From Selaginella moellendorffii (taxonomy: Eukaryota > Plantae > Lycopodiophyta): a DNA stretch of 64,000 nt. Location of the stretch: contig NW_003314292.1 in the NCBI RefSeq assembly GCF_000143415.4, forward strand, positions 1,371,498-1,435,497. Reading direction: 5' to 3'. Position numbers and translations under genes: made by a program. A model generated the notes under the pieces. That model was not told the origin of the DNA, ran no database searches, and was given only the letters and a program-made list of their open reading frames with translations. Positions 5,021-61,691 of this stretch are shown piece by piece. Positions within the stretch are counted from its first letter, which is position 1, and each line of letters starts with the position of its first letter.

Positions 5021-6969
5021 AGTGAACTCTTGTTGTCATGCAGTATGACGTGGAACAAACAAAAGATTAGTTCGACACTGTCCATGACTATAACAAAAGT
5101 CACAACATAAACTGTGTAGAAGTAGCATTGCTGTCCTCTACAATATGCTCAACCTTATCTATCCAGCCGGCAGCATCTCTTTGTTGTTTTTTTCATGGCC
5201 GCTTACATTGTTTGTGACTTCATTGAAGATTCACAGCTAGAAATCATTCTTTTTTTAATTCTCTACTTGACAATGCGTTTCATCAATGAATAGCCTATGT
5301 TCAAAATTGACCAAGTCAAACACAGTCTTTAAAGAATATTGCACATGCAAGAGAATATTTTATATAAATGAACAAGAAACGAATAATACTTTTCTGTGGT
5401 TTTCTTAATAATAGTGCATATTATTTATTAATCATATTGATTATGTTTATAATTTATAAACAAGAGATTAATCTTATTACATAGAATAACTAGAATATAC
5501 TAGGAATAATTTATAAATACATCATTAATCTAAATGAAAAACAACCATTAGATGGTAGAATATTCCAAAATATCAAGTATATTCTAGGTATATTCATTAA
5601 CCTGTTTGCTTATAAAAAATTTAATAAAAATAAAATATTTATAATATTAAAAACACTTTAAATAGTATTTAGAATAATTTTGCATATATAAAATATCAAA
5701 TTTTTTAGTAAAATAAATTACCAATAGAAACCATGTTTTAACCATCAGTGGATCATTATAGAGCACCGAAGTTAAATCTTTTGCACTCTAGGCCTCTACC
5801 ACCACCATCCTCTTTGATTGCATTTGTTGTAAAATCCTTCTTTTCCTAGAGGTTTTGGCAATTTATGGATTCAGAATATTGACGAGAGAGAGGCAAAATT
5901 CCCCAGTCACCCTTGTATGGACGACCAAAATCACATGACATGTTCTTTCTTTTCCTTTTTATCGGGAAAGTGTAAAAGTCAAGGTCTTCTTACGAGCATT
6001 GAAAACAAGGTTGACGAGATACACCTGGTATATCAGTAGAAACTATAAACTTTTCCAAGGAGAAAGATGATAACAAATTGGAGTTGAAATATATGAAGAT
6101 ATAACGGCGAGGACACCAAGAGAAGGTTTAGTGCAACAGGCCGGACTAGAAAATCTCGGATAGCCTCCAGCACCTCCTACGACATTTGCGGCAATCACAA
6201 AGTCAACATGGCTCCGAGCTTTTACTTTTCCGATGCTCAACAGCAGAAGCAAGCCTCTCAGGTGGTGGAGAGAAGACGAACAACCTCCCAAAGTCAGCCT
6301 TCCTCCGACCTGTCTTCTTGAGAGCGCATGGAACCTGTGACGTTAACTTGTTCCACGAAAAAGTCCCTCGTCACGCTTAGAACCACGAGGAGTTGCAATA
6401 GCTCTCGAGAGGAGGAAGTAAAAACCAAGAGTTACTCGTGGAAGATCTTGAGTGGGACGTTTATTCGATCGTGATTCCAGTCTAGTGGCAGTAGCAGAAA
6501 TGGAAACAGGAAACATTTAGGAGCAGGCAAACCATTCGAGGGGTCAGCCACGTCGACTAACTGTCGGGGATTACAGCCTGGCAAGCTGATCGGCGCAGCA
6601 TGTCTGTGCTACTCAGACATGCTGACATGCACGGCTCGATGAAATTATCCACGCACATCTGGAGCTCTGTGAGTCGGAAATCTGCGTTATCATACGTCAT
6701 TCAGAAAGCCGTTAGCGCGAGTTGTTTTTTCCAGATTGGAGAAAGAGAATTTGGAAAATACCAGGGTGGGATATTGGGTTTCTTTTTTCGCAACAGGTAA
6801 GGCTTGCTTGGAGCATGCGGTTAATTTTGTCATTTTAGGAGTTCTTACACAGCTTACATTTCTAAGAGTGGGAAAGTATGAAACGAACCATAAATTTATT
6901 GGTTCAAGACATTTAAATCTCTAGCCTCTCAAACCTCTCATCTAGACAATTCAGAGCGAATTCTCAGAA

Positions 6970-44222: not shown

Positions 44223-46130
44223 CTACGGCTTCGAATCATCTTGGTTTTCTTGTTCTTGAGCAAATCGACGCCAGTACCAGTGCTTACTCCACTCTTGCTG
44301 CATTTCCTCGATTGGGACTTTCTTCGTCTCGGGCAAGAAGAAATGCACGAAGAGCGTCATGACCACCACCCAGCCCGCGAAGAACAAGAAGATCCCAAAC
44401 CTGAAGTGGCAAAACATCGAGAGAAAGGATTGCGCGACCGCGAAGGTGAAGAGCATGTTTACTGCGACGGTGATGCACTGACCAGCAGATCTCGTCTCAA
44501 GAGCGAAAACTTCGCTGGGAACCAGCCATCCCAAAGGTCCCCAAGACCACGCGAAAGAAACCACGTAAACGCATGTCACCACCAAAATCACTACTGCAAA
44601 TCCCCGAGAGAGCTCTTCGTTCCCATTGAACTCGAATGCTAGAACCAGTCCAGTGACAACCTTGAAAATCATTGGAAACATTTGTAAGTACTGCGATCGA
44701 TCATGACTTACCTGGCCAATAAACATAAGAATTCCTCCATGGAGAAAGAGAACTCTCCGGCCAAACTTGTCAACCGTGAAGATCGAGATTCCAGTTCCAA
44801 TGATCAGCATCAATCCCGTGATCACTGCCGAGTAGAGCGAGGCATTGCTGTGGAACCCGATCGACTGGAACAACACCGGAGCGTAGAAAGTTATAACATT
44901 GATGCCTGTGACTTGCTGAAAGTATGGAATGAGCACGGCCATTGTGAGCTGGGGCCTGTTCTTCCGGCGAAAGATGCTTAGAAATGGATCCTTGATCGTC
45001 GAGGCAACTCTGCTGGCTTCCACCAGATCCTGGAACTCGGCCTCCACGTCTGGAGTTCCTCGGATTTTCTGGAGGACTGATTTCCCTTGCTCGAGATGGC
45101 CTCGCTCAATCAGGCTGTTTGGAGTGTCAGAGAGGAAAATGGCCGCAAGGGTGAGGAGCGATGCTGGGACTGCCGCAAGGCCGAGCGAAAGTCTCCATCC
45201 CCAGGGCTGGAGATTAGCAGTGCCATAGTTGATGAGATTCGCACACAAGATCCCAAAGTTGACGGCTTGCTGGAACATTATGTTGAGACCACCGCGAAGT
45301 TTTGGTGGTGCCATCTCTGATAAGTAGACTGGTACTGACTGGCAACAAAAAGAAAATAAAATAAAATAAAATAAAAGACTGTTTCGTTCTCTATGATGAA
45401 GTTACCTTTGAAGTTAAAATGTTTCATCCAGGAGGAAAAATCATAAGATTTAAATGAGAATCCAATGCAGTCTTACCTGGAGGAGAAAACCACATGGTTA
45501 ATCTTCCTTTACCAGAACTTTAGACATAGATCAAGCTTACCTGCAAAGAAAAATGCAAACCTTTGTAAGTTTGTGACGAAGGTAAAAGAATGAGGGAGTT
45601 TCATGCCTGATTTCCAAAGCCGACTCCGACACCCAGCATCATCCGGCCGATGATAAGCATCGCCAAATTCTCTGCGGCAGCATTGAGAGCCGCTCCAACG
45701 AGAAAGCTGAGGCCACCAATTAGCATTGTTGGGCGTCGCCCCTTGTTGCTCGTCACGTAGGAAGCTCCAAAGCTCGCAAAGAGAGCCGCGAGATAGAGCG
45801 AGGATGTGAATGCCTGGAGACCCTGGTTGTCATACTTACAGTAATTGTTCTCATGGGCAGCGTGCTTGCGGACATAGACAGTGGGGAAAAACTTGATGAG
45901 AAAATCGTCCATGGCGATAACACCACCTAGAAAAAGAACAAAAAAAACAAAGAGAAGAACTTGCAATAAGTGAAAACCTCTGCTATACCTGAGATTCCAA
46001 TGTCATATCCAAATATCAAACCTCCGCTGGCGGCCGCGATGCAAGCCAGCAACACCGGAATGGTAGTGCGACCCTTGTAATTGATCTGCCTATTTGCGAG
46101 CGATGGAGCGAGAAGAGATCCTCCAGCCAT
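44223..46130 (-). CDS. STP: Sugar transport protein (STP/MST hexose-H+ symporter); exons 46130-45989, 45926-45607, 45338-44712, 44660-44223
   Basis: [29 protein letters not shown]|[31 protein letters not shown] and PETK. Intron 2 has a GC donor. Confidence 0.95.
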
Positions 46131-46333
46131 CGAGGACAAGTGAACAAACCCAAAACTGTGTTAGGCAACACACTGTCCTGGTCCAAGCTCTCGTCGTCAT
46201 GCGTGGACTTTGACCGAGAGGATATTTGCCAGCTTTATATAGTTTTTTCCCTTTAAGAAATTACAATTTTGTCCGTAGGAAACATCAATCAAATAGAAGG
46301 ACGGCTTTCTTAAAATAAATTATAACCAATGAG

Positions 46334-60467: not shown

Positions 60468-60503
<36 letters not shown>

Positions 60504-60504
60504 C

Positions 60505-60538
<34 letters not shown>

Positions 60539-61385
60539 ACATACATATATATATATACATACATATATATATACATACATATGTATATATATATATATAC
60601 ATATGTATATATATATATATACATATGTATATATATATATATACATATGTATATATATATATACATATGTATATATATGTATATATGTATATATATGTAT
60701 TTATGTATATATATGTATGTATGTATATATATATATACATATATATATATATGTATATATATGTGTATATATATATGTATATGTTTTATATATACATATA
60801 TATTGTATACATGTGTATATGTATATATATATGATAAAGGTACCTGAAGATAGAAATCAAAATGTTTCATCCAGAAGAAACAATTATAGATTTAAATGAG
60901 AATTGAAATTATCATTTACCAAATAGTTAGCTAAACAAACCAAGAACATATCCTAATAAGAACTTTTGGTAAGCATCACCAAATTCTCTGTGGCAGCATT
61001 GAGAGCCCCTCCAATGAGAAAGCTGAGGCCACCAATTAGCATTGTTGGGCGTCACCTCTTGTTGCTCGTCACATAGGACTCTCCAAAAAGAGCTGCAAGA
61101 TAGAGCGAGGACTTGAATGCCTGGAGACCCTGGTTGTCATACTTACAGTAATTGTTCTCGTGGGCAGCGTGCTTGCGGACATAGAAAAACTTGATGAGAA
61201 AATCGTCCATGGCGATCTTATAGGACTCGCTAAGCGTTGAAGCGTCTTCTATACTTGAGATTCCAATGTCATATCCAAATATCAAACCTCTACTGGTGGC
61301 CACGATGCAAGCCAGCAAAACTGGAATTGTAGTAATCGATCTGCTTGTTTGTGAGCAATGGAGAAAGGAGAGATCCTCCAGCCAT
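60090..61385 (-). pseudogene. Decayed full-span STP paralog interrupted by a microsatellite
   Basis: Colinear with 44260-46130, with many deletions and CpG transitions. Confidence 0.9.
60459..60832. repeat. Compound (TA)n/(TACA)n/(TATG)n microsatellite
   Basis: Directly visible. Confidence 0.98.
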
Positions 61386-61691
61386 CGAGGACGAACAAAC
61401 AAACCCAAAACTGTACTTGACAGAACAACAAGACTCAGAAGGCAGCACACTGTGCTGGTCCAAGGTTTAGTCGCCATGCGTGGACTTTGACCAAGAGGAT
61501 ATTTGAATATTTGTCAGCTTTATATTGCTTAAATTCAAACAGAGGTTGAAATTAAAAGGGTAAAGTTTTGAAAATGCATGCACAGCCAAATAATTTCAAA
61601 TTTTTCTGTATTTGTTTTTCTTTTGATTGATTCACTATATAAATTGATGATAAATTCGAAACATACATAAAATTATAATTTTTTTCATTTC

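What the first reader, a model, noticed from the sequence alone, without database searches (positions are those of the whole stretch)
45339..45606. STP intron 2 is four back-to-back mini-introns: candidate recursive splicing with zero-length exons
Seen: on the minus strand the 268-nt intron divides with no intervening bases into GCATGA..ttttctttgcAG (45606-45541, 66 nt), GTAAGC..attaac..ttttctcctccAG (45540-45477, 64 nt), GTAAGA..ttttaacttcaaAG (45476-45406, 71 nt) and GTAACT..ctttttgttgccAG (45405-45339, 67 nt). Each unit has the ~50-70 nt size typical of introns in this window. Each internal junction is an acceptor fused to a consensus donor (AG|GTAA); the third acceptor (AAG) is weaker. The protein (GFGNQ|SVPVYLSE) needs no extra residues. 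The decayed paralog keeps the third junction as a canonical cttCAG|GTAC (~60840-60848). Knowledge: recursive splicing at AG/GT ratchet points is established in long animal introns; I know of no established case as a regular array of minimal introns in a plant. Inference: the intron is removed stepwise, fitting a spliceosome tuned to short introns, or acting as a timing or regulatory device.
Basis: partly seen in the sequence, partly recalled or inferred. Interest (0 to 1): 0.9.

Follow-up and report, generated by a model that had tools for sequence, protein, structure and literature searches.

The report
Intron built of abutting mini-introns
One 268-base intron of a spikemoss sugar-transporter gene is built from four intron-sized units joined end to end, and public RNA data show the internal joins are really used as splice sites; piecewise removal of this kind is well described only for very long animal introns.

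Summary
The window is Selaginella moellendorffii. Intron 2 (45606-45339, minus strand, GC..AG) of the STP7-like gene XP_024537347 splits without leftover bases into units of 66, 64, 71 and 67 nt, joined by GCAG|GTAAGC, CCAG|GTAAGA and AAAG|GTAACT. Three AGGTAA in 268 nt is far above chance (P about 1e-5 in dinucleotide shuffles; 3 of the window's 21 sites). Four paralogous loci have one ordinary 59-84 nt intron at this position. RNA from four runs of three studies shows the mature junction and partly spliced forms. These are exon 2 joined to unit 3, exon 2 joined to unit 2, unit 2 joined to exon 3, and (inferred) unit 3 joined to exon 3. Junction 2 therefore serves as both acceptor and donor. 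A k=31 graph simulation of these isoforms reproduces the observed contig lengths. Outer units 1 and 4 are almost never retained, while inner units 2 and 3 linger, which fits independent removal of mini-introns better than a strict 5'-to-3' ratchet. The other haplotype keeps junctions 1 and 2 but has lost junction 3. Steady-state RNA cannot show whether the partial forms mature or are dead ends. I rate it a new variant of a known kind, seen at one locus.

The parts
45607..45926 (-). Exon 2 of the STP7-like sugar transporter gene, ending ...GGAAATCAG (GFGNQ).
   Evidence: Exact spliced mapping of P0001 onto L001. Pfam Sugar_tr positions 28-119. RNA contigs cover it.
45541..45606 (-). Unit 1, 66 nt: GC donor (CAG|GCATGA) to acceptor TTTGCAG. 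Junction 1 is AG(45542-45541)|GT(45540-45539).
   Evidence: Sequence. Read and contig depth is about zero here, so the unit is efficiently removed. Its removal alone is indicated by loose ends reading exon 2|GTAAGCTTG in X5 and X7.
45477..45540 (-). Unit 2, 64 nt: GTAAGC .. TTAAC (branch-like, 21 nt upstream of the acceptor) .. TTTTCTCCTCCAG. Junction 2 is AG(45478-45477)|GT(45476-45475).
   Evidence: Sequence. Its acceptor is used with exon 2 (a 130-nt skip in one X27 read and in X5 and X7 contigs). Its 3' end is joined to exon 3 in two X7 contigs.
45406..45476 (-). Unit 3, 71 nt: GTAAGA .. TTCAAAG. Some RNAs retain it as a 71-nt insert with an in-frame stop (GTA AGA CTG CAT TGG ATT CTC ATT TAA). 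Junction 3 is AG(45407-45406)|GT(45405-45404).
   Evidence: X5 contig of 124 nt and X7 contig of 102 nt hold the whole unit with no mismatch. The lengths match exon 2|unit 3|exon 3 in the k=31 simulation.
45339..45405 (-). Unit 4, 67 nt: GTAACT .. (TTTTA)n .. TTGTTGCCAG, ending at the final acceptor.
   Evidence: Sequence. No contig covers the part of it that is not repeat-masked. Its removal alone is inferred from the 28 unplaced letters of the 124-nt and 102-nt contigs.
44712..45338 (-). Exon 3, starting TCAGTACCAGTCTAC (SVPVY...).
   Evidence: Loose ends TGGTACTGA before 45607 show the mature junction 45607|45338.
45927..45988 (-). Intron 1 (62 nt, GT..AG). An ordinary mini-intron, used as a control.
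   Evidence: The joint is seen in all four runs, with no partial forms.
44661..44711 (-). Intron 3 (51 nt, GTAAGT..TTTTCAAG). A control that shows an AAG acceptor works in this gene.
   Evidence: The joint is seen in all four runs.
60800..61460 (-). Decayed paralog (pseudogene) of exons 1-2 and intron 2. It keeps part of unit 2, unit 3 (89% identical) and junction 3 as CAG|GTAC (60845-60842). The exon 2 end, unit 1 and junction 2 are deleted. Downstream sequence is replaced by TA/TATG microsatellite.

Best explanation
Intron 2 of this Selaginella moellendorffii STP gene is a composite intron. It consists of four abutting mini-introns in this haplotype and three in the other, separated by zero-length exons. 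Each internal join is a dual splice site: a pyrimidine tract plus AG, directly followed by GTAAG or GTAAC.

Each unit has the size and signals of an ordinary intron of this genome, so the spliceosome can pair sites across one unit or across several. Any removal leaves either a new CAG|GTAAG junction or the final exon-exon join. Every partial product therefore remains a substrate, and the intron can be cleared piecewise in several orders as well as in one GC-AG step.

Shown here: the anatomy; use of acceptors 1 and 2 with the exon 2 donor; and use of donor 2 with the final acceptor. Also inferred: that the partial products go on to mature mRNA, and that units are removed largely independently, with the outer units fastest.
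For: Anatomy and non-randomness.

Units resemble real mini-introns of the gene family in length, donor and pyrimidine tract. Paralogs carry one 59-84 nt intron at the identical phase-0 position, so the array is a lineage-specific state of one intron.

RNA evidence:
- A joint skipping 130 nt (45477-45606, units 1+2) appears in one raw read (X27) and in contigs of X7 (depth 11.5) and X5 (depth 14.9).
- Two X7 contigs read ...CTCCTCCAG|TCAGTACCAGTCTAC, that is, units 3+4 removed.
- Loose ends in X5 and X7 read exon 2|GTAAGCTTG, that is, unit 1 removed.
- Contigs of 124 nt (X5) and 102 nt (X7) hold unit 3 plus 28 unplaced letters.
- The mature junction appears as 9-nt loose ends.

A k=31 de Bruijn simulation of the isoform set reproduces every observed contig length (124, 102, 57, 52, 45, 39) and every loose-end length (28, 15, 9, 8). 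The set was: mature; exon 2|u3|exon 3; exon 2|u2|exon 3; exon 2|u2u3|exon 3; and the hapB forms.

Contig depth of the partial forms is roughly 10-25% of exon depth. In raw reads the intron depth is about 3-8% of exon depth.

In haplotype B, unit 3 has lost 33 nt and junction 3 has lost its GT. That leaves units of 75, 85 and 98 nt, all still of ordinary intron size.
Against: All RNA evidence is steady-state, from two raw-read runs at low depth (one direct junction read) and two sets of short assembled contigs. It cannot show precursor-product relations.

Products of two-step and one-step removal are identical in sequence, so use of donor 1 and of acceptor 3 is not demonstrated.

The unit 3|exon 3 and exon 2|unit 2 joints rest on contig-length logic, 8-nt overhangs and depth arithmetic, not on listed joints. 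The tool dropped joints next to the masked repeat 45341-45383.

Longer introns are common in this species (mean 285 bp, PMC5310277), and a neighbouring intron of about 190 nt has no AGGT. Subdivision is therefore not a general necessity.

Junction 3 is dispensable in haplotype B. The units share no detectable sequence similarity, so the origin of the array is unexplained.
Confidence: 0.6

Rival explanations
1. One-step intron with strong cryptic sites. Productive mRNA comes from a single GC-AG splice of the whole 268 nt. The internal AG|GT sites are used only in a minority of transcripts. This gives dead-end, stop-containing isoforms, such as unit 3 or unit 2 kept as a poison exon, which are degraded by nonsense-mediated decay. 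These isoforms could be mere noise or could be used to tune transporter expression.
For: Every partial form carries an early stop directly after GFGNQ (sequence). Exon 2|unit 3|exon 3 looks like a classical cassette-exon isoform. Haplotype B cannot include unit 3 at all, since its donor 3 is lost, yet it is expressed (SNP alleles at about 50%). In short human introns, recursive use is reported as stochastic and minor (PMC10156609).
Against: It does not explain why three near-consensus AG|GTAAG junctions with pyrimidine tracts tile the intron into intron-sized units (P about 1e-5). All partial forms keep intact flanking sites and so remain spliceable. Several different partial forms are seen, not one regulated isoform. 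Their depth (10-25% in contigs) is high for decay targets.
Confidence: 0.3
2. Strict 5'-to-3' ratchet, as in Drosophila. Exon 2 is joined in turn to junction 1, then 2, then 3, then exon 3, co-transcriptionally.
For: Exon 2|unit 2 and exon 2|unit 3 joints exist, and unit 1 has the lowest coverage.
Against: Units 3+4 are removed while unit 2 is still present in two X7 contigs. Unit 4 is removed while unit 3 is still present, inferred from the 124-nt and 102-nt contigs. Unit 4 should be the most retained unit under a ratchet, yet no contig covers it.
Confidence: 0.07
3. Chance motifs plus artefacts. The AGGTAA sites are coincidental, and the odd joints come from reverse-transcriptase template switching at the CAG|G microhomologies or from another DNA copy.
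For: Every joint has 3-4 nt of microhomology by construction ('both 4'). Chains of the bare AGGTA 5-mer occur in a third of shuffled windows. The joined forms were not checked in DNA runs (section 5b was not given).
Against: The same joints recur in three independent studies, at GC/GT..AG borders only, at 10-25% of exon depth in contigs. Four different joined forms would need four DNA copies. The contigs match this gene at 100%, whereas the pseudogene is only 89% identical. The 6-mer array has P about 1e-5.
Confidence: 0.03

Closest known systems
Zero-nucleotide recursive splicing at ratchet points (Drosophila Ubx and other long introns; reviewed in PMC13149111 and PMC5126111)
   Same: A juxtaposed 3' and 5' splice site, (Y)nCAG|GTAAG, lies inside an intron. 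[quoted passage not shown] No nucleotides are added to the mRNA.
   Different: Known cases lie in introns of tens to hundreds of kb in animals and proceed 5' to 3'. Here the whole intron is 268 nt in a land plant. It has three sites about 65 nt apart, so every segment is a minimal intron, and removal does not follow a strict order.
Vertebrate recursive-splice exons (RS-exons, Sibley et al. 2015, as cited in PMC13149111 and PMC10156609)
   Same: After the first step, the regenerated 5' site competes with a downstream 5' site, so a stretch starting with GTAAG is either removed or included with a premature stop. Unit 3 behaves this way: regenerated CAG|GTAAGA competes with AAG|GTAACT.
   Different: The scale differs (a 71-nt stretch inside a 268-nt intron). 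No evidence of exon definition or of exon-junction-complex control was obtained here.
Fungal stwintrons and complex intervening sequences (PMC7138796, PMC5639578)
   Same: Short U2 introns in a short-intron genome are excised by consecutive splicing reactions at one intron position. Some can alternatively go in one step. S. moellendorffii's intron length distribution clusters with that of fungi (PMC6157073).
   Different: In a stwintron, an internal intron interrupts the donor, branch point or acceptor of the external intron, so the order is obligatory. Here the units abut end to end and each has complete signals before any splicing.
Dual-specific splice sites (AGGT used as 5' or 3' site; human UBC array, PMC10809524)
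   Same: AGGT sites are used both as acceptor and as donor, and a tandem array of them gives stochastic isoforms.
   Different: In UBC the array delimits coding repeats. Here it delimits non-coding units with no mutual sequence similarity.
Plant microexons, including the 1-nt exon of Arabidopsis (PMC4674806, PMC8831610)
   Same: Two plant introns are separated by an extremely short exon.
   Different: Here the exon length is zero, so nothing marks the step in the mRNA.

Membership tests
Zero-nucleotide recursive splicing | Intronic acceptor fused to a donor: pyrimidine tract, AG|GTAAG. | tested here: met
   Junction 1 is TTTTTCTTTGCAG|GTAAGC, junction 2 is TTTTCTCCTCCAG|GTAAGA, and junction 3 is the weaker AACTTCAAAG|GTAACT.
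Zero-nucleotide recursive splicing | [quoted passage not shown] | tested here: met
   Exon 2|GTAAGACTG (a 130-nt skip) is seen in one X27 read and in X5 and X7 contigs. Exon 2|GTAAGCTTG is seen as 8-nt loose ends in X5 and X7. The lengths are reproduced by simulation.
Zero-nucleotide recursive splicing | The same site then acts as a 5' splice site, giving a second lariat that starts at the site. | tested here: inconclusive
   Junction 2's GT is used as a donor to the final acceptor in two X7 contigs. However, this occurs in its genomic context, not demonstrably after regeneration. No lariat data are available.
Zero-nucleotide recursive splicing | Precursor-product relation: sawtooth nascent-RNA profile or kinetics. 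| not testable with these tools
   Only steady-state RNA-seq was available.
Zero-nucleotide recursive splicing | Host intron is very long (typically over 10 kb). | tested here: not met
   The intron is 268 nt in this haplotype and 258 nt in the other.
Stwintron (spliceosomal twin intron) | An internal intron interrupts the donor, branch point or acceptor of an external intron, which becomes functional only after the first excision. | tested here: not met
   The units abut. Each has an intact donor and acceptor in the unspliced RNA. A [D1,2] reading would need an internal intron starting with CA.
Dual-specific splice site | One AGGT is used in vivo both as a 3' and as a 5' splice site. | tested here: met
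   Junction 2 acts as acceptor in the 130-nt skip and as donor in unit 2|exon 3.
STP/sugar porter gene with the conserved intron 2 position | A phase-0 intron between GFGNQ and (S/A)VP(V/L)YLSE. | tested here: met
   The same position and phase are found in four paralogous loci, with single introns of 59-84 nt.

The most novel reading that the evidence does not exclude
In the fungus-like short-intron regime of Selaginella, an intron can exist as an array of autonomous minimal introns separated by zero-length exons and be cleared unit by unit in no fixed order. This would be a class of composite intron present at many loci. It would give a route by which introns lengthen, or fuse after exon loss, without leaving the size range the spliceosome prefers. 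It would also be the first documented recursive splicing in a plant.
Probability: 0.2. Interest if true: 0.85.

Novelty: new variant of a known kind. Interest (0 to 1): 0.66.

Why it matters
Recursive splicing is documented in long animal introns, and its extent in plants is stated to be unknown (bioRxiv 10.1101/588780). Consecutive splicing of short introns is known only as nested stwintrons in fungi. This locus offers a small, tractable plant case: 268 nt, three sites, and a natural allele that has lost one site. With it one can test whether minimal introns placed end to end are removed one by one, how splice-site pairing is chosen under intron definition, and how composite introns arise. 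It also matters for annotation. The original JGI gene model dropped six conserved residues (VGFGNQ) to avoid the GC donor. In addition, unit retention could be mistaken for cassette exons.

Tried and rejected
1. Tandem duplication as the origin. Pairwise alignment of the four units, with splice consensus trimmed, against shuffles gave z below 1 for all unit pairs. There is no support for a recent duplication, and an old one cannot be excluded.

2. Repeated element or introner origin. blastn of the units against the window and six loci found only the allele and the pseudogene. The whole genome could not be searched.

3. More RNA evidence through truncated proteins from partly spliced transcripts. 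A search with the exon 2 peptide found no near-identical short proteins (best 74% identity).

4. Orthologs in other Selaginella species. The closest non-self homologs are at most 64% identical (Diphasiastrum), so cross-species conservation of the junctions could not be tested.

5. Stwintron reading. Rejected because the units abut and are not nested.

6. U12-type intron. Rejected because the donors are GCATGA and GTAAG.

7. Earlier scan notes. Four searches found nothing similar in this genome.

8. The site at 6795 (+), TTTTTTCGCAACAG|GTAAGG, was looked at as a possible second case. No gene context was established.

9. The first three attempts at look-up of sequencing runs failed because the machine was busy. 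The same request later succeeded.

Full report
**What is there.** The window is Selaginella moellendorffii scaffold GL377596.1. The gene on the minus strand from 46130 to 44223 encodes XP_024537347, "sugar transport protein 7" (508 aa, Pfam Sugar_tr).

Exact spliced mapping of the protein gives three introns:
- intron 1: 45988-45927, 62 nt
- intron 2: 45606-45339, 268 nt, GC..AG, phase 0 between GFGNQ and SVPVYLSE
- intron 3: 44711-44661, 51 nt

| Unit | Coordinates (minus strand) | Length | Ends |
|---|---|---|---|
| 1 | 45606-45541 | 66 nt | GCATGA..TTTGCAG |
| 2 | 45540-45477 | 64 nt | GTAAGC..CTCCTCCAG |
| 3 | 45476-45406 | 71 nt | GTAAGA..TTCAAAG |
| 4 | 45405-45339 | 67 nt | GTAACT..TTGCCAG |

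The Pfam profile passes from exon 2 to exon 3 without a gap, so no coding bases hide between the units.

**Is it more than chance?** AGGTAA occurs 21 times on both strands of the 64-kb window, and three of these lie in this intron. That compares with 0.044 expected per 268 nt. In 200,000 dinucleotide-preserving shuffles of the intron, P(at least 3 AGGTAA) is 1e-5 and P(at least 3 AGGTA) is 2e-4.

It is the only chain of three AGGTA spaced 45-110 nt apart in the window. A caution applies: chains of the bare 5-mer turn up in about a third of block-shuffled windows. By my own rough estimate, a chain of three 6-mers is expected about 0.002 times per window. Over a whole-genome scan the motif alone would therefore not be decisive.

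What makes the array convincing is a combination of features. The sites tile an intron exactly. Each follows a pyrimidine-rich tract (0.67-0.83). Each unit has the length, donor and acceptor of ordinary mini-introns of this gene family, which are 51-114 nt. The weak AAG acceptor of unit 3 is no obstacle, because intron 3 of the same gene ends in TTTTCAAG and is fully spliced.

**Family context.** Four other S. moellendorffii STP loci have introns at the same three positions and phases. Their intron 2 is a single intron of 84, 67, 70 or 59 nt with a GT donor. The 268-nt array is therefore a lineage-specific state of one old mini-intron.

The units show no sequence similarity to each other (z below 1). 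They have no other copies in the sequence held here. The origin of the array is therefore open.

**RNA evidence.** I laid two raw-read RNA runs (X27, X28) and two runs held as contigs (X7, X5), from three studies in all, on 44560-46160. Introns 1 and 3 appear as clean joints in all four runs.

The main intron 2 joint was dropped from the joint table because it touches the masked repeat 45341-45383. It is still visible as contigs whose letters before 45607 read TGGTACTGA, which is the start of exon 3. This confirms the GC donor and the RefSeq model. The older JGI models (EFJ22410, EFJ25488) skip VGFGNQ to reach a GT.

Beyond the mature form, these partly spliced forms appear:
- (a) A joint skipping 130 nt. 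Within its 4-nt ambiguity this is 45477-45606, that is units 1+2 with GC..AG ends. It is seen in one X27 read and in contigs of X7 (depth 11.5) and X5 (depth 14.9). It reads exon 2|GTAAGACTG.
- (b) Two X7 contigs begin at 45477, and their preceding 15 letters are the start of exon 3. They read ...CTCCTCCAG|TCAGTACCAGTCTAC, so units 3+4 have been removed from the junction 2 donor.
- (c) An X5 contig of 124 nt consists of 26 letters of the exon 2 end, unit 3 without mismatch, and 28 letters that do not continue into unit 4. An X7 contig of 102 nt consists of CAG, unit 3 and 28 such letters.
- (d) Contigs in X5 and X7 have eight letters before 45606 that read exon 2|GTAAGCTTG, so unit 1 alone has been removed.

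An X7 contig at 45450-45506 is collinear across junction 2.

Depth arithmetic for X27 suggests two intron-touching reads. It has 52 and 18 covered bases in the two bins over unit 3, and 29 and 8 in the bins over the 5' part of unit 2. One read would be exon 2|unit 3|(exon 3) and the other exon 2|unit 2. This is my inference, not a listed joint.

**Check of the contig logic.** Items (c) and (d) rest on lengths, so I simulated a k=31 de Bruijn graph from explicit isoforms of both haplotypes. The set was:
- haplotype A: mature, exon 2|u3|exon 3, exon 2|u2|exon 3 and exon 2|u2u3|exon 3
- haplotype B: mature and exon 2|u2|exon 3

The simulated unitigs are 124, 102, 57, 52, 45 and 39 nt, with overhangs of 28, 15, 9 and 8 nt. 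These match every observed contig and loose end. In particular, 28 is what is expected if unit 3 (...AAAG) is joined to exon 3, because it shares only AG with the exon 2 end. Likewise, 25 exon 2 letters is what is expected if a second path exon 2|GTAAG(C) exists.

One mismatch remains. The tool itself warns that a hole proves nothing.

**What the RNA shows and does not show.** Junction 2 is used in vivo both as an acceptor (a) and as a donor (b). Junction 1 is used as an acceptor (d). Junction 3 is used as a donor (c, inferred).

Unit 1 has essentially no coverage, and no contig covers the unmasked part of unit 4. Units 2 and 3 are the ones that persist. This pattern, together with molecules that lack downstream units while keeping upstream ones, fits independent removal of mini-introns in no fixed order. 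It fits a Drosophila-type 5'-to-3' ratchet less well.

The partial forms reach roughly 10-25% of exon depth in the contig runs and about 3-8% in the raw reads. All carry a stop just after GFGNQ. All keep intact flanking sites, so they can be spliced further.

Steady-state data cannot tell intermediates from dead ends. One-step and two-step removal also give the same sequence, so use of donor 1 and of acceptor 3 is unproven.

**Second haplotype and pseudogene.** The allelic scaffold GL377586.1 (XP_024533810; locus L002) has an intron 2 of 258 nt with the same GC donor. Junctions 1 and 2 are intact, although unit 1 is 9 nt longer and unit 2 is 21 nt longer. Unit 3 has lost 33 nt and junction 3 reads AAAG|GGAAC. 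That allele therefore has three units of 75, 85 and 98 nt.

All units in both alleles stay within the size range of ordinary introns. This fits a unit-size rule, but it is only two alleles. The junction cores are too short for their identity to prove constraint.

The decayed paralog 15 kb away (about 61460-60800) keeps part of unit 2, including the 21 nt, so haplotype A carries a deletion there. It also keeps unit 3 at 89% identity and junction 3 as CAG|GTAC. The array, including junction 3, therefore predates that duplication, and haplotype B's GG is a derived loss.

**Against necessity.** The reported mean intron length in this species is 285 bp (PMC5310277). The intron length distribution does cluster with that of fungi and differs sharply from other land plants (PMC6157073). 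The neighbouring chorismate synthase gene has an intron of about 190 nt with no AGGT at all (boundaries inferred by homology). Long introns thus need not be subdivided, and a timing or regulatory role is speculation.

**Comparison with what is known.** The motif and the exon-to-site joints meet the sequence and intermediate criteria of zero-nucleotide recursive splicing. The host intron, however, is about two orders of magnitude shorter than known cases, and the order is not strictly 5' to 3' (PMC13149111, PMC5126111).

Unit 3 behaves like a vertebrate RS-exon. Recursive use in human introns under 1 kb has been reported as minor and stochastic (PMC10156609).

Fungal stwintrons are the nearest short-intron analogue of consecutive splicing (PMC7138796), but they are nested, and that defining feature is not met here.

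Junction 2 qualifies as a dual-specific splice site in the sense of PMC10809524.

For plants, a 2019 preprint states that the extent of recursive splicing is not known (10.1101/588780). My literature searches found no plant case and no array of abutting minimal introns.

**Verdict.** The most likely reading (0.6) is a composite intron that is cleared piecewise by several routes. The main rival (0.3) is one-step productive splicing with dead-end use of strong internal sites. It is a new variant of a known kind, seen so far at one locus.

Noticed in passing
window 45607-45624 (minus strand); proteins P0122/P0123 versus P0001/P0121: The original JGI gene models (EFJ22410, EFJ25488, 502 aa) omit the conserved VGFGNQ because they use a GT 18 nt upstream in place of the true GC donor. 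RNA contigs support the RefSeq model.
   Followed up: yes
window 60480-60830: In the STP pseudogene, the sequence downstream of the unit 4 start is replaced by about 350 nt of TA/TATG/TATACA microsatellite. Exons 1-2 are about 90% identical to the gene, with several deletions and an in-frame stop.
   Followed up: partly
window 2291 and 3206 (+) versus 29848 and 28902 (-): Near-identical 28-nt contexts around AG|GTAAGAAT and AG|GTAATGTT occur on opposite strands about 26 kb apart. This suggests an inverted duplication of a gene segment of at least 0.9 kb.
   Followed up: no
window 6780-6800 (+): Another pyrimidine tract plus CAG|GTAAGG junction (TTTCTTTTTTCGCAACAG|GTAAGGCT) lies in a region of unknown gene context. 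It could be an exon end or a second fused acceptor-donor site.
   Followed up: partly
L002 3143-3221 versus window 45988-45927: The two haplotypes differ by large indels in their introns (intron 1 is 62 versus 79 nt; intron 2 has five indels), while the two proteins differ at a single residue (N/K at position 375 of 508). Reads show both alleles expressed at roughly equal levels.
   Followed up: partly
L006 449-501: A paralogous STP gene (SELMODRAFT_451177) also has a GC donor (CAG|GCAAGA), in its intron 1. GC-AG introns therefore recur in this gene family.
   Followed up: no
window 43571-43382 (minus strand): The neighbouring chorismate synthase gene has an intron of about 190 nt between DLDRR and RPGQSRI, with no AGGT inside it. 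The boundaries are inferred from homology only.
   Followed up: partly
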